This document shows, one piece after another, positions 3,777-57,614 of a stretch of 64,000 nucleotides of DNA (within the stretch, counting starts at the first letter, position 1; every line of letters starts with the position of its first letter). This DNA comes from Pocillopora damicornis. Lineage: Eukaryota. The stretch covers positions 1-64,000 of the forward strand of contig NW_020846942.1 in the NCBI RefSeq assembly GCF_003704095.1. Direction: 5' to 3'. Made by a program: the position numbers and the translations under genes. Under the pieces are notes generated by a model that worked only from the letters and a program-made list of their open reading frames with translations, made no database searches and was not told the DNA's origin.

Positions 3777-3843
3777 GTTGTTGTTTCAGCAAGTACACTG
3801 GCCAAAAATTTCATCATTTTGCTTTGGTTTGTTTCATGCACAG

Positions 3844-18444: not shown

Positions 18445-20575
18445 AGCTCAAACAGATACGATTTCACGCTTAAATGGATTCATAGAGGCGTAAAGTGTGT
18501 CAAAATTTTGATTTTGTTAGTAGGTAACATCATCGGGGTTTTTATGGATGATGGCGCACAGAAGGGCCTGGGTCGAGTCTATTTAAAAAATCCATCTTGC
18601 TTTGTCTTCGAAAATGAACTCATAAGAAGAGTTAGTATGAAATATTACGTCAGTCATCAGTTTAAGAGAGATCTCTTTAAAGCTCATATCCCCACCCTCG
18701 TAATTTCGCTGGTAACAGCGTACCTATAACATTACCTCAGATCGTACCACCATCTCGCGGAGTAAACTTCATAAAGACTGGTTATTGGACGATTATGAGA
18801 GATTTCACCTCTAAAACAAATACCTTCTGTCTTATGCTAAAGAACCTCATATCAGTGAAACGAAATACTATGTCACAGTTTCTTTAACAGCGCAAATTAG
18901 CGCAGAAATCTCCATTTGTATTAATCACAGTCACGTACATGCATGTCACGCGCGCAGCTCTTTTCCTTCTTTCGTTCAATCATCGGAAACATCCACGGTT
19001 CACTTCGAATTTGAAAATTTATTTCTCATTAATTCCCCAATCCACATAAGAGTGTTACAAAAGTCTTACGATAGTAGTATAGAGAAAAAATTTAAAGAAC
19101 TAACCAACTCCACCCTTTACTACAACAAACTTGCGGTCGTAACGATAGTTTTTTCTTCGTTTGCAATTTGGTAGCTGTAAAATTTCTATCTTTTGTCATC
19201 TGTAATAAAAATGGCAAAACTTTTCACTGGTACACACCATTTAAGGTTCTTGCTTTTCTTTTGTATCATTTGTGTAAAAGTGTCTAATAAAGTTTGTAGT
19301 GTGTGTTAAATACTTCAAAATAAGTTATAGCTCACATAAAAGCTTAGAAATATATTAGCTACGATATACGAGCTTACACTTCTAAGATAAGTAAACATTA
19401 TCTTCCTAGAAGCATTTAGCATGCCGGTGAAATATTTCATACAACTATTCATTAGAAACCAGCGAAGCTGTAATTCAGCGAGAGAGCTCAAGTTCGCTCA
19501 TTGCGTTTCCAATGCCCAGCTCAAGTCAATGAAAGTACCTGGCGTTTAACTAGGAAATACAATAACTGTTAATAAGTGCGGTTTGTAATGCTTTCTTGGC
19601 GACTAGAAAAATAGTTTTGATTTAACTTTTACAAAAACGATTATCAAAAGTTGCCCCTCCACTTATAAAAATTGTGTCAACTAGAATATTGATGGTTCAT
19701 CAAAAGCGTAATGAATTACACGAACTCCACTTGTTTCCACAACGAAATACTGTTCTAGATCGTGGTTTATCAACGATATCTGTTGTCCGAAATATAAACA
19801 ATTTCCCTTAGAGAAACCTTTAATTTAAAAGCATGCCAATTTTCTATATATTGCACTGCGGCTTTATGTCATAGAAAATATTCCACAAAGGTCTTCATAT
19901 GATAATCGCAAAAAGTTTCCCTTTTTACTAGTGCTGAATTATTCAGCCCCATCCCTATCCGAAATGAGGTACCTGGCTCAGGCCAGACTAGCCCGCCATT
20001 TCATATACTAGGATCCTTATATATTCAAGCGCCAGTGCGGCTATTCGCGAATGGGTTGAAATTTGAGTGTCAATCTCTGTTCATCTCCAATTCCGGCTCT
20101 TTGGTACGAAGGAAGCTCGTACCAGTTTCCACGTTTTTCATAGGTTTGAGTTAAATAAGTTAAAGTCTGTCCAAATCGAGTGTTATCGTGTCATTTGTAG
20201 TTACTATGGCAAAAGCCTAAAAGGTTTTAAATAATTATCAAAAAAGGTAATCATGACAGAAAAAGGCTACACACTGCCTTATTTGTTTTTGGTTCTTCGG
20301 GTTTGAAATCTCGCGCCTAAGAAACAGGTGACAGTCACCTTAGAAAACAAAATAAAGAGAAAAAAAAGAAGAAAAGCGCGGTATTGGAACTTATACGCGC
20401 GTACCTGCGTTACGTCAGTGTCTATTTTCTACAGGAACTACGTCCTAATATGCGACCACAACTAATAAATGGAGAGCGCCGAGTAGACTTAACTCCTTAC
20501 TACTTCTCTTCGGTCAGATAAGAGCTGGCATTAATAAGATCTATCATTCACAACAAAACAATACAATTCATGTAA

Positions 20576-23500
20576 TTAGATGGCAAGCAGATCCTGGTAA
20601 CATTTGACCTCCACGGTGACAACACCCGGCATTTGTACTTGGTGATTTCGTCTTCTTCCCATCAGCTGATGTGTTTCTGTCACGGCTTTGTTATTAATAT
20701 CAATTGCTATCTTAGCTTGACCCATGAACGAGTCCCAGAACCAGTTGTAATCCCACACCTAAATGAAAAGACGACGAGAAAGACACCCACATAAGTACTT
20801 GTACCCACTGTCACGCAACGGCCATGTTGATGACGAAATTTCTTTCAAAGCACGAAAGCTTCACTACATAGGAGAACTATGAAAATACACGNNNNNNNNN
20901 NNNNNNNNNNNNNNNNNNNNNNNNNNNNNNNNNNNNNNNNNNNNNNNNNNNNNNNNNNNNNNNNNNNNNNNNNNNNNNNNNNNNNNNNNNNNNNNNNNNN
21001 NNNNNNNNNNNNNNNNNNNNNNNNNNNNNNNNNNNNNNNNNNNNNNNNNNNNNNNNNNNNNNNNNNNNNNNNNNNNNNNNNNNNNNNNNNNNNNNNNNNN
21101 NNNNNNNNNNNNNNNNNNNNNNNNNNNNNNNNNNNNNNNNNNNNNNNNNNNNNNNNNNNNNNNNNNNNNNNNNNNNNNNNNNNNNNNNNNNNNNNNNNNN
21201 NNNNNNNNNNATGGATCAGGTGCTGAAATTATTACAAAATAAAAAAAGCAATTATCAGAAATAAAATAATAATATACAATTCGGTTAAATTTAAGAAAAC
21301 GCTTCACCTACTAGGAAATCGAATTGACTTTTAAGAAAGCTTAAAACACCACTCTTTAGAGCATGATTCTTTTATGAAAACAGGCTCTTAACGCCTCGCT
21401 GCGACCTCGGGTACGGTGGTACGATGGTAATAACGGTGTCGAGTGCGGTGATGATACCGAAATGGGTTCCTTCCGATAAAAAGTATACACTAGTCCACGG
21501 AAAGGGCCCCAGTTACAAGAGATCCCTCATTATGAGAGGTTATGAACGCATAGGGAACGATGCATGAGTTCGCAACGGATGTGTCACCCATAAAAGTGAC
21601 GTTCATTAAAAAGGACTACCGAGTGTTGCTGCTCAATTTAAACCTCATACTGAATTCAACAATGTTTGTAACTAGTAACAAAGCTGTTAGTGTTCCGATA
21701 ACTCTTACACTACTGGCAGTAACACTTTGTTATCTTACTCATTGATAGTCTGCTGGTTTTTTGAAGTCCACCAGCTGATTTAACGGTAACGGAAAGCACG
21801 CAGACAGGAGTACGACACTGTGGGAAGCAGCAAAATATTTTACTTCCGGTGGAGTGCTCCTGGTTTAGAAACCTACAAAATAAGCAAATGACAGAGATGA
21901 AAACATTGATTTTGGGACAGTTGGTCAGCTTCAGGTACCAAGGTAGGTAGAGGGATGCTTACATTGCTTTTGAGGACTTTTCAGTGAATATTCTCATCAG
22001 GAATTGCCCAGCTTTGTTTTGCTCGTATGTGGATGGTATCACCACGTATCTTCCTTTCTTAAAGTGAAACTTGTTCACCACTTCTCGTGCGTTGATGAAG
22101 ATAGAATCTCCAGCTTTTTCAAACATCGTATGTAACCGATACTTTCTGTTCTCTTCCACCTAAGGGCGAAACAATGAGACTGAGGGCTGGCAAAAATGGA
22201 CAGAAAATGACCAAACGACTCAAAACTGAACATACGTACGTAAACGTACTCCTGTACCAGATAGACAAACAGTCAGACAGACAAGTAAACACACACAGAC
22301 CGACAAGCGAAAACAGTACAGGATAGTCAAATCGAAGGCCAGAAAAATGACTAAGCGAGGAAACCAAAAAGGCAGACAGGCACAGAAATACACAGACAAA
22401 TAGAAACACCGATACCGAAACACAAATTGTAAACGTACACCAATTATGATCACACAAACTGACGGACATGCACATGTAGGTGGTAGTATAGCAGTCAAAA
22501 ACACATAAACAAACATTGTGGCAGAAAAAACAACTGACAGTCGTCACGAAGATAGGGACTGATAGGCATTAAGACAAACCTCAAAATGACAAATATTTGA
22601 CTGGAAACAAACGAATTCTGACAAATATGGTTTGCATAATCAGAAATGAAAAGATGTCACCCAGATAATTGATAGCTGTTTTAGCAGTGTTACCTTCATG
22701 ACAAAATATCCAATGGTGAGATTTTCTGCGCCATGTTCTTTCGCTTTTCTTGTGTCTTCCTGCATCAGCGAGATCATCACTTCTCCCTCCTCTTTGACAG
22801 TGAAAGCATACTGACAAAATCAAACGTTCAATTGATAGTAGTTGCAGGACCTCAAGAAGTTGTGATAATCAGAAAAATGCAAAGACACTTAAGTCGTCAA
22901 GCCAAATGACTCAAAGCTACTGGTGCTCATATCTGTTAAGTCTCACTCATTTCAGATAACCTCCTGATCCCGGACCCCTATCTCCCCCCCCTCCCCCCTT
23001 CTCTCCCATAACATTTCTTCAGGTTCCCCTGATGGTTTGGTGCTACTAATTTACACGTAGATGGGTGGAGAGAGCACTGTGTGAGAACATTTTCTTGCTA
23101 AGAAACAAGAAATGTCTATTACAAGGCTTGGGTTCTCCAATAGAAAAAAAGTGCAAGCTGTGGGTAAAAACATGAACATTTCTTCAATTACCAAACAAAC
23201 TAAATGAAAGAACACACAGGTAAATTAAAGCTCATAGAAAAATGTTATGTACCTGTGGGTTCTTCAGGAAAGTGCTTCTATTTTCAACACACCCACCAGC
23301 AGTGGAGCCTGGTGACCACTGATAGTTGTGTTTAAACACATGCCATCTGTTTGAGAGTGAAAAGATTGATGTGTTGATGACATGGCACAAGGTGGCATTG
23401 GTGAAGTGTGAGCAGAAGTCTTCAAAAGACATCCTAAAGACAAGAAAAACCACACAAAAACAATCAATATGGGTGAGCGCAAAATTCAAAACATGTAAAG

Positions 23501-26500
23501 AAGAGAAGCCAAAGATATGCTAAAACTACAACACCAAGTAATGGGTAAAATATGTTAAAAAAGAGTACATGCACTAACCAAAACTCTCCATCATTCTCAA
23601 AGACAATCCCAAGTTTTTCTCTATCACTTGATTTAAGCTTTTTCCACTCTTCAGAGCTAAAAAAATTATGAATTCAAAATGGATATCATAATTCTAATAC
23701 GGAAGCAATCCTTGCAGCTATGAACACTACTTAAGTACTTGTGAAAATAAGGCCAAAAAGAAATTAAGGCCTGTATGAGATTTGAACCCATGACCTCTGT
23801 GATACTGGTGCAGCACTCTACCACATGAGCTAACAAGCTAACTGGGAACTGGTCATTATGTTGATTCCAAATAAACCCTCAAAGTGGTGATTTTTTGTAA
23901 TAAATAACAATGGGAATAATATTTTTTTGAACCAGTATTAGTATAATATAATATAATATTAAAATAAGATAATTAATAGTAATAAATAATAATTAAATTA
24001 GGATAATTATCCTAGTTTTGAACAAGAATATTTGATAAGAATAACATAAAAATCATTATCGAAAAAAAATTAGTTTTCAGTTGTTATTACTCATCACTCC
24101 AAGGTCCATTCCACTCTTTTTGACCCCAAGGATTCCTCAGACGAATCATGTAAAGATGTTGTCGATTGAACAGACTAAAAAGACCCTCACCGATGGTGAT
24201 CTGAAATAAACAAGTATATTGTATGGCCAAGTGTGGGTTGCAATTTTATCTGTTATAGTTGTGTGTAAATCACTGCAAAGCTAAAAATTGCAGTATTTAT
24301 GAAAATTTCCTCTGAGTGGAGAATTAAACAAACCATATCAAATGAAGTTACTATCTTTAGAATATATACAATGTATGTCCTGCAGCCTACAATCTACATC
24401 TTTGTCACCATGCAGTTTGAGAATGTTGTTATTCTTTTCTTACTTTGCTTTTTAATTTATTTGTTTGTGGTTGATTTTCTGAATGCTGATGATCAAAAAA
24501 CATAACAGCAGGAGAGCAGTGCAGCAACAGACCACAGGGAACCTGATCCGTAAGATGCACTGATCACAGCTGTAGAATCCCATCCAATCACAACTGAGCC
24601 CAACAGCACATGGATTTGAACATTTATTTGTTCAACCTCATTGCCTGAAGAAGACTGGCAGTATTGAGTTGAAACATTGCAATCCACTGAGATCAGAAGT
24701 GACCACATCATGGGAGAAATGATTATATTTCTCTTTTGAAGTGTTATTTACCATCATGGTAAATAACACTTTAAAAGATGATGATGATGACCAACTATAA
24801 CCTATTACCATAAGTTAAAAAGTTGAAGTTACCTTCTTTACTGCTGTGACACCATATGCATGTCCCATAACTAAACCAGTCTCTGTGCGCTTTTCCATCT
24901 CGTCTCTATTTTTGATCTTGTAAAAAAAAAGGGATATGTCAAAATATCAAATTTTTGATGTGTTCATATGATAAACTTCTTTGCAAGGTGAATACTTGAC
25001 ACACCTCCAGTGTTTGCTATCTGTCAAGATAAGACTTAATTGACTATAAGGCAACCTGTACATCACAACTAAGTTCCACATTTTATTGATTAAGATTTTC
25101 TCACACTTGAATATATTTTCAAAAGGGAAACCAAAAGTAATTGCCATGCTCATTTTAATTCCTTTCATTTTCCAATCAAGTTTTTAGGTCCTTGTGAATC
25201 CAACTAGTATACATGTATAATGTGCAAGTACACACCCACTGTTTGTACAGCACTTACTCTTATTGAAGCACCAATCAGGGATTTATCTCGCATTGCTCTT
25301 TGCATACTTTTAAACAAGACCAGTCTCTTCTCCTGATCTTGACTGTAACCTCCATCCTTAAGGCTGATCGACTCACAGACTCCACCAGTGAAATCTACTA
25401 AGGCATCACCAGTATTACCTGCTTCTAATGCTTCATATGAACCTGCCATTCTTAAAAAAGAAAAAAAATTGTTACCCATTTCACTTTACAACTCCATTGG
25501 CGTATGGAGTATTACAGTCCACTATTTCTACATATCTTCCAAAAACTTTACTTACTTAGCATATGCTTTTTCCACCAGGGCACTCCAAAACTCATTCTTG
25601 TCTGTCGAGTGGATGTACACCAGTTTTCCAGCAATTGTTGGTAGAAGATCATCGATGACAACTTCAGTCCATTGACCTTGACGGAAGAACCGGAACCTAA
25701 AGATTCCTTGATAATTACCAACATTTTCAGGGTCCCACTCCTGATGCTTTATATCTGGAATCACCTGAACAGGTTAAAACAAATAACACAAAAAATTTTA
25801 AAATATCTGATCCGTGGTTGATAAGAGGGATAAATTGATCTTCACAGGTAACCTGCAGTTAAAGCTATATAGTAATTGAATGGAAAGAAATTAAGGCTTC
25901 ACAGGGCTCTTAACCTTCAGTCTTGACCTTTCACATGCAATCAACCTCCACAAGCAGTGCACTGTCATAACATTACCAAGATATACAGACCTTCTCTAAC
26001 AGAGATGGCTCCAAAGCCAATGAGGAACATGCTGCAACAAACCAACAATTCCCAAGTTTTCCTTGGGTGACATCATGGCTGCTCATTCCATCCACAAACA
26101 GCTGAGGTGGGTCAGGAGTACAGATGTCCTAAGGAAAATGCAGAAAACAGGATCCATCAGAGTTTACTCTTAATCTTTTTTAGTTTGACCTGTTATTGTT
26201 TTGAGCCTATATAAATGCAAAGGTCTAAAGGAACTTGTCTTTGTTGTGATTGTTTTATGGAGGAAGGGAAAGAAGCCTGAGAAAGTGCTAAAAGACTATG
26301 AAAAAATAGAGCCCCTAAAACATTGCCCTCCCCCTCACATGACTGACCACATGTACATGGAAAGTTCTGTTGTTCTATATTCACTGTATTTCAAAAACCA
26401 ATTAATGGTGGGACCAGTTAGAGGCAAATGCTTAAGGTTAGGCATTGTAACAACCTCTTAATTCAACCTTGGGATTGTTATTACCCATGTTCAATCACTG

Positions 26501-28220
26501 CAAAGGGTTACTCTTATTTAATCAAATTTTGTCAGTGTTTGCAAAGAGTAAGTTGGTTCAGCCCTCTTCCTGCCTTGCCAGGTAACCTATGACCACAACT
26601 TGGTTGACTTAGCTGAAAGAGTTTTATCTTCTTCTTCTTCTTCTTCTTTCTTTTTTAAGATCTTGTTCCAAAAGCTAACTAGTATTTGATCTGTCCCTCA
26701 GGTTTACCAAAGTTTTGTTAGCATATATGTTTCCTTTACTCATTTTGGCTGATTTAATAGTTCTTACTATCAAGTTTTGGTAGTTAGAAAGGCTGCCCAA
26801 GCAATCTTGAAGAAAGTCAAATGCTTTTATAGTCTGTCAAGGTTGAAATGAAAAGTATACAAACACTATTTTTCCCTGTATTTTATCATAATTTGTGGTA
26901 CTTCAACCCAGGGTTGTGTTGAAAGGTCTCAGTTCTCCCTAAAACATTTTGTTCCTCCCTCATCCATTATCTATTTCAACCACACTCTTCCCTCCCCTTT
27001 GCCCCTCCAGAATGTCTCTCAGTGATATGCGTGCACATCAGTAGCTATGAGGGGGGGAAGGGGGGGTGAGGAAGGAAGTGGACGGGCGTTCACATTCTGG
27101 TAAGTTCTACGGGTGTAATGAATTCAATTACAGTAGAATGCCCGCAAATAAATATCTTGCTTAAGTATAAAAAAAGGACATAGTTTTTGTTCATTTATAG
27201 CATAGTATTGCTTCACTATAACACTATAGGGAGCTAATTGATCATGGTGCAATATTTGTAAATGAATTGGACGCGAACCAACGTAACTGCGCCTAAGAAA
27301 AGCGCAATATACCATTTCAAGCCTGAACATTTCGGGGAACGATAAAACACTTATGACTTAGTTTTCATATTTATGAAAAGAAAAACCAAAAACTTCAATT
27401 TCTCTCTCGGCTCTGTGGTTTGAGGCAAAACTTATCAAGCACTGCGAAAGCAGATACTTCAAGTGACGATAACATAATAACGAGGCAATTAATTAACATA
27501 TGTTTATGTTTTCTAACCGTCTCGATCAATCCAGAAGTTCCATAAAACTATATAGCTACAATGCGTTGGTACATCGACAGGATACAAAAAAAGCGGAATA
27601 TCACTACGATTGCAAAATATCGCTGGAATGAAGCTAAAAAACAAATCAAAATCTATCGTTTTGAAAGTTCCACACGTCACGTATTATGTACGGGCACCAG
27701 AATTTTAAACAGCTCCTTACAAGAGCTTGGAGACACAACAATATTAAAGGATTAATGTATTAATTTAATGTCTAACGTTGGCTAACGTAAATAATTCAGC
27801 ACTTTTCCAATAATGTGGGTTCAAGAAGGTATTTTAAAAGGCAGAATAAACCAACTTTTCACCTACGCTCTCGTTAAGCAACACAATGTACAGCAAAACA
27901 TTTAAATGAATTCAATAGCCGATAAATGAGTTAGAAGTCTGTGTATTTTCCAACGCATATCGGATCACCGCCATGCTCGAGATGGAGACACAGCGTTAGT
28001 TAGTCTACATAACTCAAATAAAAGAAAGCCCTGCTGAAAATTAATGTTACAATACCTTGGGTCTCTTCCATTCTACGTGCTCGGGAGGTGTCGCTCGACT
28101 AAAGTACAATGATTTCGTCTCGGGCGGAAATTCAGGATCCACAAAAAGTCTTTCATCTCTTTCGCATTGTCCCTTAAGCTTGCTGTAACGTTGATTTTTG
28201 AAATAATGTAACTTCACCAT
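20576..28220 (-). CDS. CAPN5: Calpain-5-like protease, copy A. Exons 28056-28220, 25991-26128, 25556-25764, 25258-25450, 24833-24916, 24091-24200, 23579-23656, 23253-23433, 22694-22810, 21963-22159, 21739-21872, exon 12 from 21222 into the gap, 20576-20758
   Basis: Same intron positions and phases as copy B. Starts [16 protein letters not shown], has the [16 protein letters not shown] and RNPWG triad motifs, and ends with the C2 exon [14 protein letters not shown]...DLLAI*. Most of exon 12 is hidden by N. Confidence 0.93.
20892..21210. other. Assembly gap (319 N) covering most of calpain A exon 12
   Basis: Run of N. The exon start ttcag|cacctgatccat runs into it. Confidence 1.
22190..22545. 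repeat. Degenerate (AC/AGAC)-rich low-complexity tract in calpain A intron 9
   Basis: Recurring agacaaac, acagac and acacac units. Confidence 0.55.
23705..23890 (-). mobile_element. tRNA-derived SINE-like repeat, decayed
   Basis: The minus strand of ~23768-23843 reads tagctcatgtggtagag (A box) ... ggttcaaatc (B box), with a broken cloverleaf and no CpG left. Confidence 0.65.
24490..24700 (+). mobile_element. Penelope-like element terminal remnant with a hammerhead core, in calpain A intron 5
   Basis: ttgcCTGAAGAa-gact-ggcagtattg-agtt-GAAAcattgcaa at ~24641-24682. The upstream sequence resembles terminal repeats of coral Penelope-type elements as I remember them. Confidence 0.5.
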
Positions 28221-28514: not shown

Positions 28515-36980
<8,466 letters not shown>

Positions 36981-37106
36981 CTAACATCTCTTACATGACG
37001 AGACAAACTCTTAAGAGGCATAATCGCATATTTATAAGATCTGTGTATAATAATAATAATAATTTTTCTAGAAAAGAAGTCATACTAGTTAAAAGCAGAA
37101 CTGAAA

Positions 37107-37295
37107 AGAGGATTTCAATGGGGTTAAGTAGTAGCTAGTCGTAAAATGGCTAGAAAATTTAGCCGTTAGGTGTAAAACTTAACAAATTTTAACTGGAAGT
37201 CGTAACAGAAGGTGACCGCAAAAACTTTGACCTTTCTAGAAAGGATCATTTTGAGTTAGCCGTTAGCCGTTAGATGGCCAAATTTTAAACCCCAT
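37107..37295. repeat. Dispersed repeat with ttagccg/agtcgtaa subrepeats; related to 59641-59890
   Basis: Shares the tggg.tt.agtagtag...cg.aaaa terminus and the gccgttag/ctaacgg motifs with the reverse complement of 59641-59890. Confidence 0.5.
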
Positions 37296-38669
37296 TTAAA
37301 TCTTCTGATTAGTTCTGAAATCAAAGCTAACACAGTTTCAACTTGTCTGAAATTGGAGACCATGACTGCCCTGTGATACCGATGCCGCTTGAAGTTGTGT
37401 GGAGCTTCATTTTCACACTTTCTCACCATCTTTTCTTTTCCAATAATAAACACAACGCTCTCGACATTTCCAATCCAGGCAGTATACCGAAATTTCTTCA
37501 CATGCGTTGCTTGGACGTCGAACTTGGCCTGGCCCACCAGCGAGTTATTTGGTAGATCGTCGGACCACGATATGTGAAGTTCTGAGAATCACTTCCTCTT
37601 TGAGAACTTAGATCTTCCCCAGCCTCACGTTCATGAAATTGGAATAACATCTTTCTCTGCTTTTACAAGATTTGTTTCAGAGTAGACTGATCTGTCTTTA
37701 ATGTTTTAAATGATTTTTAGATTTATGAAACATATGATTTTCTTATATTCTCTTTACAACGATGACGATTGATCGATTATAGTAAATTTTAAATCTTTAT
37801 ATTACTGGTGATTGGCGCAGGTAAAATTACATGTACGTTCGCTTGCCAACTTGATCTGAAATTTGATCCACAGACATGTGCATTACATTAAGGCAATAAA
37901 TGTGTTCCTTTAAATTGAAGAACACGTTTTCCTTTTTTCTTTTCTTCAACAGCCCTCTGGTGGTCAACGTGTGGTTCGTTTCGCAATGCATGACAACTTG
38001 TTGACGACTTTTCGAGCTATTACGTTTCAAAACTCGTGCTCAATAACTTATTTTTATTCCGGCCTTACTCATGACATTTAAACATTTCATGGTCAAGACC
38101 AAAATTGATATAAAAAGAATTCGTTGTAAAACTAATCCAGTTGTGAATCATTGACGCAAGTCAGTGAACCAAAATATATATCTCAACCTTCGCCTCATTG
38201 TCGTTGAGGTTGGTGGCGTTTTATAATACTTGCTAGTCTAAAAGCACATTCCTCCATTTCCCTATTTTTCTTTGCCGATCCTCTCAAACTGACGGAACAA
38301 TATTTTACCAAACTATCAAACCGCTTATTGACCGACTGACCCATCAACCGAATGATCAGATAGACAGGCTACTACATGCGTTCATTTATTGAACAACAAC
38401 GCCTCACTAGGATTAGTGGAGAGGCGCGGAATAAAGTCGCTCGAGTACAATCGCAATGCTGACCGACGGGATGATTGCTAATTTCTTGCTCAAAAGCTGG
38501 TTAACTGACGAACGAAGTGACCCATTAGTTGTATTTTGTTAACCATTTGTGAACGGATTCATAAGTTTCCATAAAATTATTTTAAAGTAGTCACTAGAGC
38601 ATCAATATGATGATATAAAGGATGTGGTATTTAGAGGGTCAATAACGTTTTGTTTGTAGTTTTTAAACA

Positions 38670-39593
38670 TCAGACCACAACTCGCTCTGATGGGTCCACA
38701 TTTACATTTGTGCAACAGAGTTTTCTCACACAACTATCCATCTTGACGAAAGTCTCCACATGAAAGCCGCCATACTCTCGGCACCGACACGGCTGCCCCT
38801 CTTCAACCAACCGTTCTTCCTCTTCTTCATCTTCCAAACACGGGAGATACAACGGGGTCATGTCGTCTTCGTCATAGACCAGTTCTGCTCCGCATTCAAG
38901 GGCAGTCAAAAGGTTTGAGTTGATATCGCTTGAACAACGACCAGAAATCAACATACTTGTGGTTGCTTTATTCTTGGCTGTTTTGACGGGTGCTTTAGGA
39001 TAATTTACAATTGGTCGGCTCGTCACCTTCGAGGCAGATCCCATTCGGCGATTTCGGGAAGGACGAGAGACATTCTTGAGTTGCAGGCTTTCTGGGCTTG
39101 TCACGCCCGAATGATCAAATTTTACGGGTTTGGTTGTCTCATTAGCACTTTTTAATTCAGATTTTGAGTCGTCGTTGAGAGAAACGGGGTTTTCCTTGAC
39201 GGAGCATTCCTCCCTAGATTCCAAATTGAGCTTCACTGCTTGTTTGCCCTTTTTCTCTTTTTTGGTGGGTTTCTTATCCACATCGGGAGTTTTCAACAAG
39301 GAATCAATGTCGTAAACTTGACCCACTATTATTAAAGTATCTTTGAAGAATTCCCTTAATGAGGGTCTCCATTTAACGAGCTCTTCAATGTCTCGCAGTG
39401 CTTTAGCTTGTGATAACATCTGCTCTTTAGCCGTGCCGTACGAAGGACCGGAATGAAACACTTGGTTGCTAACTGAATACCAACCATTGCTTGTCAAAAA
39501 AGCTTCCACTGACCTCTTTTTGTAGCCAAAGGTTTGATCTCTACTTGGAAATTTCGCCTTATCAGTTGTGTACTTAAAAAACACAGCAGCCAT
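38670..39593 (-). CDS. Intronless 307-aa protein of unknown function: ~100-aa globular N-terminal domain (VapD/Cas2-like by eye), disordered Lys/Ser-rich linker, acidic and Cys/His-rich C-terminus
   Basis: A 924-bp open frame in AT-rich DNA with raised GC and start context gctATGG. The fold assignment is inference only. Confidence 0.75.
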   Translation of the reverse strand: MAAVFFKYTTDKAKFPSRDQTFGYKKRSVEAFLTSNGWYSVSNQVFHSGPSYGTAKEQMLSQAKALRDIEELVKWRPSLREFFKDTLIIVGQVYDIDSLLKTPDVDKKPTKKEKKGKQAVKLNLESREECSVKENPVSLNDDSKSELKSANETTKPVKFDHSGVTSPESLQLKNVSRPSRNRRMGSASKVTSRPIVNYPKAPVKTAKNKATTSMLISGRCSSDINSNLLTALECGAELVYDEDDMTPLYLPCLEDEEEEERLVEEGQPCRCREYGGFHVETFVKMDSCVRKLCCTNVNVDPSERVVV

Positions 39594-41189
39594 AGCTTGC
39601 TCCCAAAGTTACGCGATCAATCGCCAAACGTTTCTTGAATGAGTAGTCCTATCGAATTCCCACAAAAAAAAGAATGTTGTCGACACTTCAATATGCCCTG
39701 TAATGTTTGGCTTTTCAGTTTCGTAATTTCGTTGAAATTACTGGCAGGGTTAAGTTTTCCCACGCCTCTTTGCTTCAGTTCACAACATCTACACACTGTT
39801 GTAATCTACTGAAAACTTTCAAATTCACACACTCCTTTATTTTGTAACCTGCCCTTAACACTGAAGTTAAACAGCCAATTGGCTTTAAGTTACACAAGGG
39901 TGTAATTCATCTTTAACATAACTTACAGGTTTTCTTTTCAAAAGGAAATATGAGACAATTAAAACCATCCTATGTTAGTAGGCCACTTTGTTAATATATA
40001 ATAAGTTGAATTTATTCTCCACTGAAGCGGTGAAACTAGTACTCAAACAATGCATTATCAAGTTAATAGTTTCATTGCAGTCAACTGGGATGGTTTCTGT
40101 GCTCTAAAAACATTTTTTCGATAAATGATAGTCTTAGTTAATCTTTGAATGTTCCTCTGCTTCCTAATTCCCTATCACATAACACAAAAGAGGTGACTTT
40201 GAAGGGTGTGTACGTGTAGATCTAGTACCTGACGAACACACTTCTCAAAAAGGTTGTAAAGATTAAAGAAAATTTACTCCAGAACGTTTTCCCCGGCATG
40301 TGTTGTTGACACGTTTTCTTCTCGTCGCTAAAACTTTTGATAAGACAAATGCGGCTTATTCTCTGTTATAGACTAAATAAGTTCAAGATTACTCGATATT
40401 TGATGAGATTTCTTTCTTTTTGTCTCTAACACTGATCACCAGTCGTGGACAATTTCTCACCCAGAAATTTGTCGAAAATGTCGTTCCACTGAACCATTAG
40501 TGGGGTGAAAATTTTGCAACCGTACAATTTCATTTGACACAAGAAGTTACTAACCATACTTTAATGATAAAATTTACATCATATGGTTTCTCATTTCCAA
40601 ATTCGGTTTTGTGTCAACTGGTTGTTAATGCAGGTACATGAAGTTCCTGTACAGTTCCGATTCACGCAAACAATCCGCGCATCGAATTTGCGGGCTAAGT
40701 ATAAATTTGTTTTTTGGGAGCAATAACCGCTATCGTCAGAAATTGCCAACTTCCGTTTGGATGAAGAAACAAACAGTACGTATCTGTCAAAACTGCATGA
40801 AAAAAAAAATCCGTGGAATTGGTTGTCTGAGTCACAGCTATTTGTAATAACCGTTGGTAAGTCAATATTTGTCGAATGTAATTCTAGAGTGCCCCTTTTT
40901 CGCTTTACTCCGCTTTTTAATTGGTTCTGAAGCTCCTGCCACCTCAACCAAATAAGTTGCAAAGAGTGACACCGATTGTGACCTAGTCACTTGCAATTTC
41001 CCGCTCTTCAGGTTGTTTTGTTGTTTTGATTCTGACTTTTCATTTGCTCCTTACCATACTTCACTTCGCTCTGGTTGGCCGTTGTTACTACTTTTGTTGG
41101 GTTTTATGAGACTCATTTGAAAAATGCTCAACACATCCGAAGATACGATCTTCTTAAGTAAGGCAAACAGATAACCTCATACCACTGCT

Positions 41190-41766
41190 CATAATGGCTC
41201 AGCTAGTGCGACCTGCTTCTTCTTTTTTTTTTTTGACAGAGACATGCATGTAAATGAAACCTTATTTCCGGTATATTAAGCAAGCTCTTTACAGGTTTCG
41301 AATCACTCACTCTCATACTTCACACTGATGTACCGGTCAGTCGGAATCAGTACAGAGAAAACACGACAACTGAAGAATTCTTCCTCTTTCATCTGAAAGC
41401 CGATACTAGTAACCGCCAAGGTGCTGAGTTTGTCATTCACTCGTTTACCGTTATGGAACAAGTTGCAGATGTAAACGTAAACCTTCCAAAAGTTTCCCGT
41501 CATAGAAATTAGGTTGTTTCGTGCTCTCTAGATGATTTTGGGCCTAATCGTTTGTATAGTGTTTCTGTTTGTCACATTAACCTCGATGGAAAGGCGAATG
41601 GCGTCAGTTGAGAGCGAGCTGAAAGAAAATTCGAAAAAAGGTGCTGAGCACAATTTGCCCGAAAATGAGAAGAAAGGATCGCTCAGTTCAGCAAGATATA
41701 GGCGAAATGCTGATTTAAAGGCCAATTTTTCAGATCTTACCAAGAGACTTGAGCACTAGAGAGCAG
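41190..41766 (+). pseudogene. Disabled duplicate of the promoter and first exon of the downstream short-chain collagen gene
   Basis: Shares atgtaaa.gaaacct and tcgtttaccgt.ATGGA with 42340-42517. The ATG at 41453 meets TAG at 41510. The TM, coiled-coil and RYRR segment lies in another frame, and a 1-nt deletion precedes the retained gagagcag|gt donor. Confidence 0.8.
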
Positions 41767-45734: not shown

Positions 45735-46329
45735 TTTCGTCAAATTAAAATGACAATGGCCACTGGAGAAATATGTAGCCTTTGGTCGTTCCTCCTGTTT
45801 TCTACATAAAACGATTTAAGATGAGCCAAGCTCATCTTTTTTTTAGCATGATACTTTAAAATCAACAATGGGATATTGATAAGATTTTTCATGGCAGTAA
45901 ACTAGTTTGGTTAAGGTGATTTGTCCGATGATTGAAACCAATAGCCTGTTTGTAGTTTTTTCTATTTCATTCCATCGTATTTTACTTCTATTATTAATTA
46001 TTGATGATTCATGATTTCGAAAACGTGAATTAAATTCTATGGAATCAAATCAGTATATTATACTTGCACAAAGAGCAAAAAGCCAAGTAGAAAATATTTT
46101 TGAAAATAAAAGTTAGATAAGGTCGGATCCCATAGATTGTACATGTTGATGACACGGGTTTTGTGTTTAAATAGCCTCACAGCACCGTTCGCAAAGAGAC
46201 CGAAGGTTTTAGGCGGACAATCCTCTTGGCACAAGTACATTAAAATGGTACACCTGGTCTTCTGTGAGAGCTTTAACGATCGGCGGGCGGCACAATAGAT
46301 ATAGAGACCGGTTTCTTCTAGAGAGGAGA

Positions 46330-46480
46330 GCCGATTGATCAATGGCGCTGCTTGATATATTGAAGATTTTCCATAGCCAGTTGGTAACGAAACGGAGATA
46401 TCGTTACTTTGGAAAAAGATATTTATGGCTTTCTGTTGTTCTTCCTGAAACTGGCTAAATTCGGCCAGTCTTGAAATTCT
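46330..46480 (-). pseudogene. RecQ-like SF2 helicase fragment (Q motif and motif I)
   Basis: FSQFQEEQQKAINIFFQSNDISVSLPTGYGKSSIYQAAP. Similarity is lost downstream and no DExH motif follows. Confidence 0.7.
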
Positions 46481-47197
46481 CGACAGAGAATACATTATTA
46501 ACGTTCCAATATCCTGTTCAAGCATGAGCGTATATAGATATTTCACAATTTCAAGGCTTTATCAAGACCGTGTCCGGCTGCCGGACGAGTCAGACATTTA
46601 AATTAAAGCTAGTTGTTTCTTGCAGCGATTCTTTCGACTGAGATAAGAGTCACTCTTTCAACTAAAGAAATCTGTAAAAACCTTGAGACTCTGGGATAAT
46701 TTATCCAAGTTTTTTCGTCGACCGTGGCACTGTTTACAAATGTAAGCAGAAACTGCGTAAACGTTGAAATCTAGTTTCGTAAGCGCGATGCTAATCGAAC
46801 ATCTTCCTCTTCTTATCTATACCAAAAATCGCTCATTATCTTTTCCTATATCCTTAAAGCAAAATATATATTTGAAATCGGACGCTAAATCGCAAATTTA
46901 CCCGAAAAACGGAAAATGAATTCACTTCAGTATTGTTGTTTTATCTCGGTAACCTTCAAGCTAACACGTGCCGCTTCGCAAAAAAAATATCATCAAATGC
47001 CATTAATTGCATAAGTTAGAGTGACGTTACGGAACACGATTGGTGTCAGGTTTGCGTAGACTTTCCCTCGCTTCCGTTTCACCTTTTTTTTTGGTGGGGG
47101 GGAGGGGGAAAGTACGGCTACACGTAGGTTAGAACTATTTCAGGGGAGAGCTTGTTCATACTCTGCATACTGGAGCTGTGATAACTTCAAGTGAGAG

Positions 47198-54746: not shown

Positions 54747-56561
54747 CTTTTGCTTTTCTTTCCATTTTTGAGCTTTGTTATTCATCTATGTCTTTATTCA
54801 TTAATTTACTCACTTATTTGTTTAATTTTCATTTCACATGAGAATAATTTGATGCCAAAAAAGGTTCCTTGAGCCGAATGAAAAATCTATGAACATGTTA
54901 TCTGATCAATTTGATTGCCGTTGCTGGTTGATTATCAAATCCGAGTCCTTTTAATCTAACAGATCAAATTCCCTTTAACTTTAATTTATTTCGGCTTGAC
55001 ATAAATGTACTTTTCTCTTTTCAAAGAGCGGACAACATTTAAATCATTCTGAGTTTGCCATGAATTTCTTCAAAATTATCTGAGATGGAATCAGACCATG
55101 ACAACCCATTCTGACGTCACGAACCGCCATCTGACTGTAAACCAATCTTCTCGGTTTCTAAATCTTTTTTCGTAACTTTTCTCCGCCCGGAAATTTATAT
55201 AAGTACGTTTAGAAAGACGTAAATAAAGAGAAATAAAGAGACAACGAGACCCGAAAGAGAATTAAAATGAGAAAACAAAATCAACATGTAGATATAAAAA
55301 CGTCTAGTAAACTAATATCAAGATCCGGACTGTAATAATTTATAAAAGAATAACTTGTCACTCGGCGATGTAATCTCGTTTTTTCTTTCTCTTTCAAGTC
55401 TTCTCTACGTAAACTTTAAATGTAAATGAAAGGCAAATAAATCAAAAAAATTTAAGTTTGACCATGTAACTTTGTAATCGTTTGACCAGTTATTGAAGTG
55501 AATAAATAAATAATAATATTTTCTTCGACTTTAGGAAACAAAAGAAATTAAATTTCGCTAAGTAATACAAACAAAAATCATTCCTCAAGCGAGGCCAGGA
55601 TTCTCATTTACAGACCTAATTCAAAAAAGCAATCTTCTCTGCAAGACAACTATGTCAACATTTGCGGAGGAGGTGCAGATAATTAAAAAGCGTTCAATTT
55701 GCGAACGTCAAATGAAAATCCTTAAAGCTTGCTGGATAGGGAGACGAGATGCTTCCAAGCTTTGTGAAACTTAATTTATCTGCTCCTAATTTAGCCACGT
55801 TGTCCGCAGTTGCAGAAAATTAAAGATAAAAGTCGTTACTGTAAATTTTTAATTTTGGAATGTTTTGACTAATACGCACTGCGCGACAGGAAGCATGAAA
55901 ATTAATCAAGTTTCTGTTTGCAAAATGAAGTTGTTTTGCTATCACATTTTAAAAAGGATGGCAGGTGAGGTCCAACTTGTCAAAGAAAAATGAGGTGTTT
56001 TGAATAAAGATTCTCGATATAGGTTACACATCAGGTTTAGCATTTTCGCATGGTTGCCGAACCCAAAACTAAAATCTTTCAGCGAGAATCAGAAGCTTTA
56101 TCTTCAGTGCCCCAATACATATAGAATTTTTGCTGTGTCAATTTTCTGAACTTTCATTTTAAAGGTAAGTTTATTTGAAGTATATTTGAGCAGTTAATGA
56201 TTTCGGAAGCAGCACATGCAATCGTGCTTCACCATTTCAATCGGCTTTGAATAACATTCAAACTGACTGTTTTTTTTGAGTCGAAAATAATTCGACTTCT
56301 GAAGAGGTATAGTGCTCTGTATAAATCGACCAGAAGAAAGACAGAATGAATTGCTACATTTTCATATAAAAAGGATATTGAGAAAGAGCAACATGCAATA
56401 CCTTAAGTAAAATAATGACAAAAAAAAAATAGGAAAAAAGTTCAAACTACGAAATTAGGTTTAAGCTAATGGTTGATTTTTCCTACTGTGAGACTCTCTT
56501 TCTTCCACAGCATATCGGAACATCAGCTTGACGAGGCAGGATTTAATTGAATCCGTGGAGT

Positions 56562-57614
56562 ATGGGAAACAGCACCGACGAATCGTCTCCGTCGCTTCCT
56601 ATGTTTCCATTTTACCTGAGGGTTTTGAAGTTGAGTTTATACGTCATAATTTTTGTTATAAGCCTTGTCGCAAACAGTCTTGTTTGCATCGTCATTTTGA
56701 GACGTAAAAAAATGAAGACAGTCACAAATTATTTCATTCTTAACTTAGCCATCGCTGATCTGACGCTGAACTGTTTTTGCATCCCATTTGATATACCAGT
56801 ACAAGAATTGAACTCTATCTGGCCGTACGGTTCAATCATGTGTAAAATATTGTACCCCATACAAACACTGTTGCTCTTCGCCTCTGTGAATACCCTAACA
56901 GCAGTGAGCCTGGCTAGGCAAAGGGCCATTGTATATCCTATGAAGAGGCAGCTGACCAAATCTGGCGCTAAAATAATCATAATTGGATTGTGGCTGTTTG
57001 CCTCCATTCCCGTTATTCCGTATTTTCAAGCGTTACGATTTAATCCAGAGCTCCACATCTGTGAGGAGAGCTGGAACGACTCCACCTCCACCAAAGTGTA
57101 CACTTCAGTCATCTTCTTCTTCCAGTATCTCCTGCCATTCTGTATAATGTTCACTGCATATTTTAGCATCAGCCAAGAATTGAAAAGAAGAGCGGAGAAT
57201 GGCAACCAGTCTATGAAAGATGTTCAGGAGTTGGAGGCCCGGAAAGTAGTACGCATGCTGAAGGTGGTGACGACGCTGTTCGCTATGAGTGTACTGCCAA
57301 ACAACGTCATGTGGCTCTGGCTGGATTATGGAGACGCTGAGAGGAAATGCAAATATTTTTGGGAGTTGATCGCCTTCACAAATATTCTAATATTTTCCAA
57401 CAGCGCTGCCAATCCTATATGTTACACTATCTTAAATGAAAATTATCGACAGGAAATATCGAGGTTAATTGCATGTAGATCATGCAAACTCCGGGACATG
57501 CTTGGAAAAAAGGAAAACAAAGCTGTCAGTAAGCAACTTTCCATTGAAGAAGCTAAGAAAAGATCATCCACCGTGTCATCTTATGTTATGAATAAATTTC
57601 TTCTTGACAACTAG
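56562..57614 (+). CDS. Class A (rhodopsin-like) GPCR, neuropeptide-receptor type; single coding exon with a probable 5'-UTR intron at 56164-56510
   Basis: Seven hydrophobic segments, N-glycosylation site NST, TM1 AN, TM2 NLAIADL, WPYG..C, ECL2 CEESW and TM7 NSAANPICY. The ATG at 56562 is preferred over the TTG in the track. Confidence 0.92.
   Translation: MGNSTDESSPSLPMFPFYLRVLKLSLYVIIFVISLVANSLVCIVILRRKKMKTVTNYFILNLAIADLTLNCFCIPFDIPVQELNSIWPYGSIMCKILYPIQTLLLFASVNTLTAVSLARQRAIVYPMKRQLTKSGAKIIIIGLWLFASIPVIPYFQALRFNPELHICEESWNDSTSTKVYTSVIFFFQYLLPFCIMFTAYFSISQELKRRAENGNQSMKDVQELEARKVVRMLKVVTTLFAMSVLPNNVMWLWLDYGDAERKCKYFWELIAFTNILIFSNSAANPICYTILNENYRQEISRLIACRSCKLRDMLGKKENKAVSKQLSIEEAKKRSSTVSSYVMNKFLLDN

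What the first reader, a model, noticed from the sequence alone, without database searches (positions are those of the whole stretch)
39291..39593. Orphan intronless gene whose first ~100 aa read like a VapD/Cas2-type nuclease domain
Seen: residues 1-101 are a compact mixed alpha/beta segment followed by a disordered linker. The spacing M-x-A-V-x-F ... L33-x3-G37-W38-x6-V45-F46 ... KALxxI ... W75 ... D95-I-x2-LLK tracks, almost without gaps, the bacterial VapD pattern as I remember it (MYAxAFD ... L-x3-GF-x3-QGSVY ... KAIxxL ... W ... DF-x2-IVK). Established: VapD and Cas2 share a ferredoxin-like fold with an acidic catalytic residue at the end of strand 1. Here that position is Lys7 and the QGS motif is replaced by SNQ, so the domain would be catalytically altered or only nucleic-acid binding. 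Inference: an intronless gene among intron-rich neighbours could be a horizontally acquired or retroposed prokaryotic toxin/defence-type domain domesticated in a coral. I do not know of this domain being described in animals.
Basis: partly seen in the sequence, partly recalled or inferred. Interest (0 to 1): 0.8.

Follow-up and report, generated by a model that had tools for sequence, protein, structure and literature searches.

The report
Coral-only gene with VapD-like fold
This is a real, expressed, intron-free gene found only in stony corals and a few related, unnamed assemblies; the first 100 residues of its protein are predicted to fold like the bacterial VapD/Cas2 nucleases but lack their catalytic residues, so it most likely binds partners rather than cutting nucleic acids.

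Summary
The ORF at 38670-39593 (minus strand, 307 aa) is a genuine gene. It is single copy. Poly-A RNA contigs from three studies cover it collinearly with no splice joints. Its order next to its neighbour is kept in other coral genomes. Selection is strongly purifying (dN/dS 0.06-0.10 in the N-domain).

It is not a strict orphan: more than 35 orthologue clusters exist, all coral-like, and none in bacteria, archaea or viruses.

[quoted passage not shown] The rest is disordered but carries conserved short motifs.

In four structure searches, VapD or Cas2 ranked first:
- Foldseek E about 1e-2, probability 0.9-0.99.

These scores are marginal.

Sequence evidence is weak. There is no Pfam, NCBIfam or PDB hit. 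Profile-profile scores were reached by 3-8% of column shuffles, about the level at which the same test sees the accepted VapD-Cas2 kinship.

The catalytic Asp position is Lys7 and varies across the family. The catalytic Ser position is not kept.

Verdict: a VapD/Cas2-like fold is plausible, homology is unproven (about 0.4), and nuclease activity is unlikely. Horizontal transfer or retroposition has no direct support.

The parts
38340..39801 (-). Single-exon transcript, ends approximate. 5' UTR about 170-210 nt, coding sequence, 3' UTR about 300 nt.
   Evidence: Poly-A/oligo-dT RNA contigs from three studies lie collinear here with no joints. X2 runs 36824-39801, X5 38339-39764 in overlapping pieces, and X9 38496-39563. 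Depth is zero at 39840-41500, and for X9 also at 38003-38336.
38670..39593 (-). Coding sequence of 307 codons plus stop. The start ATG has a purine at -3 and G at +4.
   Evidence: ORF list. Single copy in the genome. Full-length orthologues. Whole-gene dN/dS 0.06-0.15.
39291..39593 (-). N-terminal domain, residues 1-101. Predicted ferredoxin-like fold: b1 2-8, a1 21-35, b2/b3 hairpin 38-47, a2 55-75, b4 86-92, short helix 96-100.
   Evidence: AlphaFold2 domain model, pLDDT 78.3, pTM 0.66. VapD/Cas2 are the top structural hits. dN/dS 0.06-0.10. Invariant residues include V4, L33, W38, S48, Q62, A65, D68, E70 and G91.
39072..39290 (-). Variable, Lys-rich disordered linker, residues 102-174, with a basic cluster resembling a nuclear localisation signal.
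   Evidence: pLDDT 30-48. dN/dS 0.22-0.48, the least constrained part. Poorly conserved in the alignment.
38904..39071 (-). Conserved basic and Ser-rich motif block, residues 175-230: R-P-x-R-x-R-x-M-G-S-A-S-K-V-T-S-R-P-I-V-N-Y/F-P-K ... D-I-N-S-N-L.
   Evidence: Near-invariant columns R177-T205 and D223, N225, N227, L229. dN/dS 0.06-0.13, as low as in the folded domain. Predicted disordered.
38814..38873 (-). Acidic block with the invariant T-P-L-Y-L core, an L-x-C-x-E-like string (L250-E254) and a Glu run, residues 241-260.
   Evidence: P247, L248, Y249 and L250 are invariant in 24 coral sequences. C252 is replaced by G or A in four of them. The block is absent from the distant members P0035 and P0038.
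38673..38789 (-). Conserved Cys-containing C-terminal tail, residues 269-307: C-x-C ... V-E-T-F-V-K ... C-C-x-N-x-N-V-D-P-S-E-R-V-V-V at the C-terminus.
   Evidence: V279, T281 and N298 are invariant and the end motif is kept even in P0035 and P0038. dN/dS 0.14. pLDDT below 50.
38385..38390 (-). AATAAA polyadenylation signal on the minus strand.
   Evidence: Read directly from the sequence. RNA contig breaks at 38339-38368 lie just downstream of it.

Best explanation
Window 38670-39593 (minus) is a functional, single-exon, single-copy nuclear gene. It belongs to a protein family seen only in stony corals and a few more distant, unnamed assemblies.

The protein has two parts. Residues 1-101 form a small ferredoxin-like alpha/beta domain whose geometry is closest to the VapD/Cas2 nucleases. 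About 200 disordered residues follow, carrying several strongly conserved short linear motifs and a conserved C-terminal peptide.

The Asp at the end of strand 1 and the Ser of the b2-b3 loop, which VapD needs for catalysis, are not present or conserved. I therefore infer that the domain acts as a non-catalytic binding module for a protein or a nucleic acid. The catalytically dead VapD homologue VapW, which works purely by binding, is a precedent. I also infer that the tail motifs recruit partners, so the protein would be an adaptor or regulator, probably nuclear given its basic clusters.

Shown here: the gene is real, transcribed and under purifying selection; the fold prediction; the absence of catalytic residues. 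Inferred: the binding or adaptor role and the localisation.

Whether the domain descends from VapD/Cas2 (my estimate about 0.4) or only converges on the same common fold is unresolved.
For: - Gene reality. Poly-A RNA contigs from three studies cover the ORF without joints, and flanking intergenic DNA is uncovered. The gene is single copy. Gene order next to the neighbour is kept in L009, L010 and L004.
- Selection. dN/dS is 0.06-0.10 in the N-domain, 0.06-0.13 in the mid motif block and 0.2-0.5 in the linker.
- Fold. AlphaFold2 gives a b-a-b-b-a-b domain with pLDDT 78 (the full-length model agrees).
- Foldseek against PDB. Cas2 and VapD fill the top ranks, with E 0.011-0.06, probability 0.89-0.99 and TM 0.4-0.59. 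Other ferredoxin-like folds reach probability 0.7 or less. VapD is also first with the full-length model.
- Sequence. The co-linear profile alignment starts at M1 in both families. It is reached by 7 of 220 shuffles against VapD plus Cas2. The Cas2-versus-VapD positive control is reached by 2 of 120.
- Catalytic residues. Position 7 is K, E, N or T across the family. VapD needs Asp7/11 and Ser46, and VapW is an inactive VapD homologue that acts by binding (PMC11980593).
Against: - No significant sequence or profile match to any family.
- The model rests on a shallow alignment of 35 closely related sequences.
- No binding partner, localisation or activity was tested. The homodimer job gave no verdict.
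- An invariant Ser48 and conserved Asp68 and Glu70 could in principle form a different active site.
Confidence: 0.5

Rival explanations
1. The N-domain is a true descendant of a prokaryotic VapD/Cas2 gene. It was captured by horizontal transfer in an ancestor of these corals, lost its catalytic residues, and was fused to a new disordered tail.
For: - VapD or Cas2 are the best structural neighbours in four searches.
- In both families strand 1 begins at residue 1-2, and the alignment is co-linear over the whole domain.
- The profile score equals that of the accepted VapD-Cas2 pair in the same test.
- The gene has a single exon.
- Coral-associated Endozoicomonas genomes carry vapD.
Against: - No prokaryotic or viral sequence relative in 1.84 billion representatives, the GTDB genomes or IMG/VR.
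- Sequence p-values are only 0.03-0.09, and 0.4 with the narrow profile.
- Ordinary GC content.
- Old, conserved gene order next to the neighbour, so any transfer would be ancient and untraceable.
- The ferredoxin-like fold arises in many unrelated superfamilies.
Confidence: 0.3
2. The domain is an active VapD-like ribonuclease or DNase that uses other residues, for example Ser48, Asp68 or Glu70, in place of the canonical Asp and Ser.
For: - VapD-like fold prediction.
- Several invariant polar residues.
- Very low dN/dS.
Against: - The canonical Asp position is Lys and varies (K/E/N/T). The Q-G-S loop is not kept.
- VapD mutants at that Asp are inactive (PMC11980593).
- The conserved acidic residues lie on helix 2, not in the inter-subunit cleft that VapD uses.
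- No dimer support (one search gave no verdict either way).
Confidence: 0.07
3. The key function lies in the tail. The L-x-C-x-E string followed by an acidic run makes the protein a binder of the retinoblastoma pocket and so a cell-cycle regulator, as in papillomavirus E7 or mastrevirus RepA. The N-domain would be an accessory.
For: L250-P-C-L-E254 is followed by a Glu run and preceded by acidic residues and a T-P site. It is conserved in most coral orthologues. This block resembles the E7 CR2 layout (my own knowledge).
Against: - The Cys is G or A in 4 of 24 sequences, whereas T-P-L-Y-L is invariant. Selection therefore acts on a different core.
- The block is absent from P0035 and P0038.
- No hydrophobic residue follows within 1-4 positions of the Glu, as the usual motif definition asks (my own knowledge).
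Confidence: 0.1
4. The N-domain derives from an HUH-type Rep or transposase nuclease domain of a virus or transposon, not from VapD/Cas2.
For: IS200/IS605 TnpA chains appear at Foldseek ranks 3 and 6, with E 0.02-0.03 and probability 0.6-0.7. An N-terminal nuclease-like fold plus L-x-C-x-E recalls mastrevirus RepA (my own knowledge).
Against: - No HUH motif and no catalytic Tyr motif in the alignment.
- No Pfam Rep or Y1_Tnp hit.
- TM only about 0.3.
- No significant match in the viral structure library or in the viral contigs.
- Single copy with no repeats.
Confidence: 0.03

Closest known systems
VapD endoribonuclease toxins (H. influenzae VapD 6ZN8/6ZI0, H. pylori HP0315 3UI3, C. jejuni VapD 9KAN)
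   Same: - Size about 90-100 residues.
- Strand 1 begins at residue 1-2.
- b-a-b-b-a-b ferredoxin-like order with a short C-terminal element.
- Best VIA Z (7.4-9.1) and among the best Foldseek hits.
- Co-linear alignment at 22-23% identity.
   Different: - No significant sequence or profile match.
- The catalytic Asp is Lys or variable, and the Q-G-S loop is not kept.
- Eukaryotic, monocistronic and polyadenylated.
- Fused to a 200-residue disordered tail.
- No antitoxin neighbour.
- Dimer or hexamer formation unknown.
VapW (catalytically inactive VapD homologue acting as antitoxin; PMC11980593)
   Same: VapD-type fold without the catalytic Asp and Ser. It works by binding, not cleavage, which is the mode proposed here.
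   Different: VapW is bacterial, is encoded next to vapD and binds VapD itself. The coral genome has no VapD partner: the Cas2/VapD Pfam model PF09827 finds nothing over its cut-off in six frames, although that model is weak even on true VapD.
Cas2 (CRISPR adaptation subunit; e.g. 6JHZ, 8IA4, 7CR6)
   Same: Ferredoxin-like fold. Foldseek probability 0.97-0.99, TM 0.42-0.59, rmsd 3.4-5.6 A across these three chains.
   Different: No Cas1, no CRISPR context, no conserved Asp at the end of strand 1. The profile score against Cas2 alone is at chance (profile T2).
L-x-C-x-E pocket-protein binders (papillomavirus E7 CR2, mastrevirus RepA)
   Same: Acidic stretch, L-x-C-x-E string, then a Glu-rich run in a disordered region.
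   Different: The Cys is not invariant. The conserved core is T-P-L-Y-L. The motif is absent from distant family members. This is untested and only a lead.

Membership tests
VapD/Cas2 superfamily (Pfam PF09827 CRISPR_Cas2 and VapD) | Significant match to the family HMM | tested here: not met
   No PF09827 hit at E up to 10 for the window protein, its N-domain or any of 26 family members. The six-frame scan of the genome gives no hit at this ORF. Caveat: PF09827 scores a genuine VapD at only 22.2 bits, under its own cut-off, so this test is weak for VapD.
VapD/Cas2 superfamily | Profile-profile similarity to VapD and Cas2 alignments | tested here: inconclusive
   hhalign results:
- Narrow VapD profile: score 12.3, equal to the shuffle mean.
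- Broader VapD profile: 16.1, reached by 17 of 220 shuffles.
- VapD plus Cas2 profile: 16.2, reached by 7 of 220.
- Positive control, Cas2 against VapD: 16.7, reached by 2 of 120.
The test barely sees the accepted relationship, so it has little power.
VapD/Cas2 superfamily | Ferredoxin-like b1-a1-b2-b3-a2-b4 fold of about 90 residues starting at the N-terminus | tested here: met
VapD/Cas2 superfamily | Conserved catalytic or metal-binding Asp at the end of strand 1 (Asp7 in H. influenzae VapD) | tested here: not met
   Position 7 is Lys in the window protein and K, E, N or T across the family. The register is fixed because both proteins start strand 1 at residue 1-2.
VapD/Cas2 superfamily | Catalytic Ser in the b2-b3 loop (Q-G-S of VapD; Ser46 in C. 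jejuni) | tested here: inconclusive
   In the co-linear alignment Q-G-S falls on S/G42-N43-Q44, so the Ser position is Gln44. An invariant Ser48 lies four residues later. No residue-level structural superposition was available.
VapD/Cas2 superfamily | Homodimer that forms the catalytic cleft | tested here: inconclusive
   The two-copy complex job returned 'no answer' (score 0.02). This is not evidence either way.
VapD/Cas2 superfamily | Prokaryotic toxin-antitoxin or CRISPR gene neighbourhood | tested here: not met
   The gene is a monocistronic, polyadenylated animal gene. It lies between a spliced coiled-coil gene and other metazoan genes.
L-x-C-x-E retinoblastoma-pocket binders | Conserved L, C and E of the motif across the family | tested here: not met
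   The Cys is G or A in 4 of 24 coral sequences, and the block is missing in P0035 and P0038.

The most novel reading that the evidence does not exclude
A VapD/Cas2-superfamily domain, so far known only from bacteria, archaea and their mobile elements, has been fixed in an animal lineage (stony corals and relatives). It would be a catalytically dead, VapW-like binding module fused to a motif-rich disordered tail. That would make it the first such domain domesticated in Metazoa.
Probability: 0.3. Interest if true: 0.7.

Novelty: new variant of a known kind. Interest (0 to 1): 0.5.

Why it matters
If the VapD/Cas2 relationship holds, this would be a rare case of a prokaryotic toxin or defence fold kept for hundreds of millions of years in an animal. 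The nuclease chemistry would be lost and a eukaryote-style disordered, motif-bearing tail added. That is a clean example of how conflict-system domains are turned into regulators.

Even if the fold is only convergent, the family is worth study. It is strongly constrained, expressed, coral-restricted and of unknown role. Such genes are candidates for coral-specific biology. The conserved tail motifs give direct handles for finding partners by pull-down.

Tried and rejected
- Pfam, NCBIfam and PADLOC scans of the protein, its N-domain and family members gave nothing relevant. One PADLOC KwaB hit in P0035, at E 0.0028 in the tail, is taken as chance.
- PDB sequence and profile searches gave only chance-level rows.
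- The ESM Atlas, queried with the whole protein and with residues 1-105, returned only unnamed or low-scoring clusters and no lead.
- Foldseek against the viral structure library gave no match with E below 0.05 and no coherent family.
- A word search with the N-domain alone found a single coral fragment.
- The large profile search found only the family itself, 7 representatives.
- GTDB genome and IMG/VR scans with the family profile found no relative.
- The homodimer prediction for residues 1-107 gave no verdict. It is not used as evidence.
- A first hhalign run used alignment A2, whose rows are full length. It was uninformative and was replaced by trimmed alignments.
- Retrogene idea: there is no parent or paralogue in the genome, so it cannot be supported.
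- Recent horizontal transfer: GC content is ordinary and gene order is conserved.
- HUH/Rep idea: the motifs are absent.
- Literature: no paper joins VapD with corals, and the Stylophora locus tag is not mentioned anywhere.
- They were rerun.
- The neighbour gene's exons were searched exon by exon by reference.

Full report
**The object.** Window 38670-39593 on the minus strand is an open frame of 307 codons. The finding's coordinates, 39291-39593, are its first 101 codons. The start ATG has a purine at -3 and G at +4, and a stop lies five codons upstream in frame.

**It is a real, expressed, single-exon gene.** Poly-A or oligo-dT RNA-seq runs from at least three studies hold the stretch. I laid contigs from three of those studies on window 36500-41500.
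- They cover about 38340-39801 collinearly with the genome and show no joints. One 3478-nt contig spans 36824-39801 without a gap.
- Nothing covers 39840-41500. One run has zero depth at 38003-38336, so the signal is transcript-shaped and not DNA carry-over.
- A minus-strand AATAAA at 38385-38390 sits just upstream of the contig breaks at 38339-38368.
- The loose end at 36824 matches window 36156-36185 and follows a plus-strand acceptor (polypyrimidine tract, then cag). It therefore belongs to a convergent, spliced neighbour on the plus strand whose 3' UTR abuts this gene.
- The contigs cannot show strand. The orientation of the transcript rests on the ORF and the poly-A signal.

**Conservation.** The gene is single copy with no paralogue, by single-sequence and by profile search of the 234-Mb assembly.
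- The word search found 34 clusters of full-length relatives at 44-97% identity. Among them are annotated 'hypothetical proteins' of Stylophora pistillata (82%), Desmophyllum pertusum and Oculina patagonica.
- The exhaustive profile search of 1.84 billion representatives found only seven. All are this family, including two distant members: P0035 (292 aa) and P0038 (285 aa; about 24-25% identity).
- In genomic contigs of three other species the ORF is again uninterrupted. The same convergent neighbour's exons lie downstream in the same orientation, even beside P0038. The gene is therefore old and vertically inherited.
- Pairwise dN/dS by the Nei-Gojobori method, from the unsaturated comparisons:

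| Region | dN/dS |
|---|---|
| Whole gene | 0.06-0.15 |
| N-domain (1-101) | 0.06-0.10 |
| Residues 175-230 | 0.06-0.13 |
| C-terminal tail | 0.14 |
| Linker (102-174) | 0.22-0.48 |

- The 82% identity to Stylophora points to a pocilloporid coral. The assembly size and contig count (234 Mb, 4393) also match what I remember of the Pocillopora damicornis assembly. That last point is from memory, not tested.

**Architecture.** The full-length AlphaFold2 model, built on 24 sequences, is confident only for residues 1-100. Residues 103-173 and nearly all of 188-307 have pLDDT below 50.
- A domain-only model (35 sequences, pLDDT 78.3, pTM 0.66) gives b1 2-8, a1 21-35, a b2/b3 hairpin at 38-47, a2 55-75, b4 86-92 and a short helix at 96-100. 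This is the ferredoxin-like b-a-b-b-a-b order.
- The disordered part is not featureless. It holds a near-invariant basic and Ser-rich block (R177 to T205), a D-I-N-S-N-L block (223-229), an acidic block with invariant T-P-L-Y-L and an L-x-C-x-E-like string (246-254), and a C-x-C ... V-E-T-F-V-K ... N-x-N-V-D-P-S-E-R-V-V-V C-terminus.
- The N-domain, the D-x-N-x-N block and the C-terminal peptide survive in the most distant members. The L-x-C-x-E-like block does not.

**Is the N-domain VapD/Cas2-like? Structure says 'closest, but marginal'.**
- Foldseek with the full-length model puts C. jejuni and H. influenzae VapD first (E 0.06 and 0.19; probability 0.95 and 0.91).
- With the domain model, Cas2 and VapD chains dominate the top 20 ranks (E 0.011-0.06, probability 0.89-0.99, TM 0.4-0.59), interleaved with a few IS200/IS605 transposase chains and one uncharacterised chain. 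The IS200/IS605 transposases reach probability 0.4-0.7 and other ferredoxin-like folds reach less.
- I read this as a consistent ranking at weak absolute scores.

**Sequence says 'not demonstrably'.**
- No Pfam, NCBIfam, PADLOC or PDB hit for the protein, the domain or 26 family members.
- I fetched a genuine VapD from plasmid pJD1 and collected VapD relatives and Cas2 genes. I then ran hhalign on trimmed alignments.
- Against a narrow VapD profile the score (12.3) equals the mean of column-shuffled controls, with 84 of 200 reaching it. Smith-Waterman gives z = 1.8.
- Against a broader VapD profile the score is 16.1 (17 of 220 shuffles reach it). Against VapD plus Cas2 it is 16.2 (7 of 220).
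- The positive control is Cas2 against VapD, two accepted distant homologues. It scores 16.7 (2 of 120) in the same test. The test is therefore barely able to see true relationships at this depth. The coral domain sits at about the same level.
- The alignment is co-linear from M1 to the end of the domain and agrees in register with the structural alignments.
- PF09827 itself scores a real VapD under its own cut-off, so failing it means little.

**Catalytic residues.** VapD needs an Asp at the end of strand 1 and a Ser in the b2-b3 loop, and works as a dimer. VapW is a VapD homologue that lost both residues and acts by binding (PMC11980593).
- In the coral family the Asp position is K, E, N or T.
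- The Q-G-S position reads G/S-N-Q.
- A dimer prediction gave no verdict.
- Nuclease activity of the VapD type is therefore unlikely.

**Origin.**
- Nothing supports recent horizontal transfer or retroposition. There is no prokaryotic or viral relative and no parent gene.
- GC content is 0.42-0.43, against 0.36-0.41 around the gene, which is normal for an exon. Gene order is conserved.
- An ancient transfer cannot be excluded, but it is untraceable by sequence.

**Verdict.**
- The best reading is a coral-restricted adaptor or regulator: a non-catalytic ferredoxin-fold (VapD/Cas2-like) head and a motif-bearing disordered tail.
- I put true VapD/Cas2 ancestry at about 0.4, horizontal transfer specifically at about 0.3, and an active nuclease at about 0.07.
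- The L-x-C-x-E-like string is a lead only. Its Cys is not invariant and distant members lack it.

**Procedural notes.**
- The scan's earlier notes contain only the same first-stage reading of this stretch and a note on the calpain paralogues upstream.

Noticed in passing
P0037, P0039 (public protein collection; correspond to window about 38700-39060): These two 'proteins' are translations of this same gene with systematic P to L/F, A to V, T to I, R to W and S to L/F changes. That is the pattern of C-to-T (bisulfite-type) converted reads assembled into contigs. They are artefacts, not variants.
   Followed up: partly
window 35348-35614, 36043-36185, 36825-36984 (+): This is a convergent, spliced neighbour gene. 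It looks coiled-coil and has no firm Pfam family. Its exons are 77-96% conserved in other coral-like genomes, and its 3' UTR runs to about 37957, possibly 38368, abutting the 3' end of the finding's gene. RNA contigs confirm the 36185 to 36825 splice.
   Followed up: partly
window 56547-57614 (+): A second intron-free ORF (355 aa) in the window is a rhodopsin-family GPCR (7tm_1, E 7e-49). Single-exon genes are therefore not unique to the finding here.
   Followed up: no
window 3819-6128 (+): A long ORF (769 aa) carries Roc and COR-A domains, making it a ROCO-type GTPase gene or large exon.
   Followed up: no
window 46058-46546 (-): This ORF has a DEAD/DEAH-box helicase match (E 4e-6), probably an exon of a helicase gene upstream of the finding.
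   Followed up: no
L095 (G001): Pfam PF09827 (CRISPR_Cas2) scores a genuine VapD gene at 22.2 bits, below its 23.8-bit gathering cut-off. Pfam-based screens will therefore under-call VapD-like proteins.
   Followed up: partly
L078, L091 (Endozoicomonas genomes): Typical vapD genes (67-69% identical to the Neisseria plasmid VapD) occur in Endozoicomonas, a genus known as a coral symbiont. They show no detectable sequence similarity to the coral protein.
   Followed up: no
window 10670-28220: An earlier first-stage note reports tandem calpain-5 paralogues with differing CpG content here. I did not examine them.
   Followed up: no
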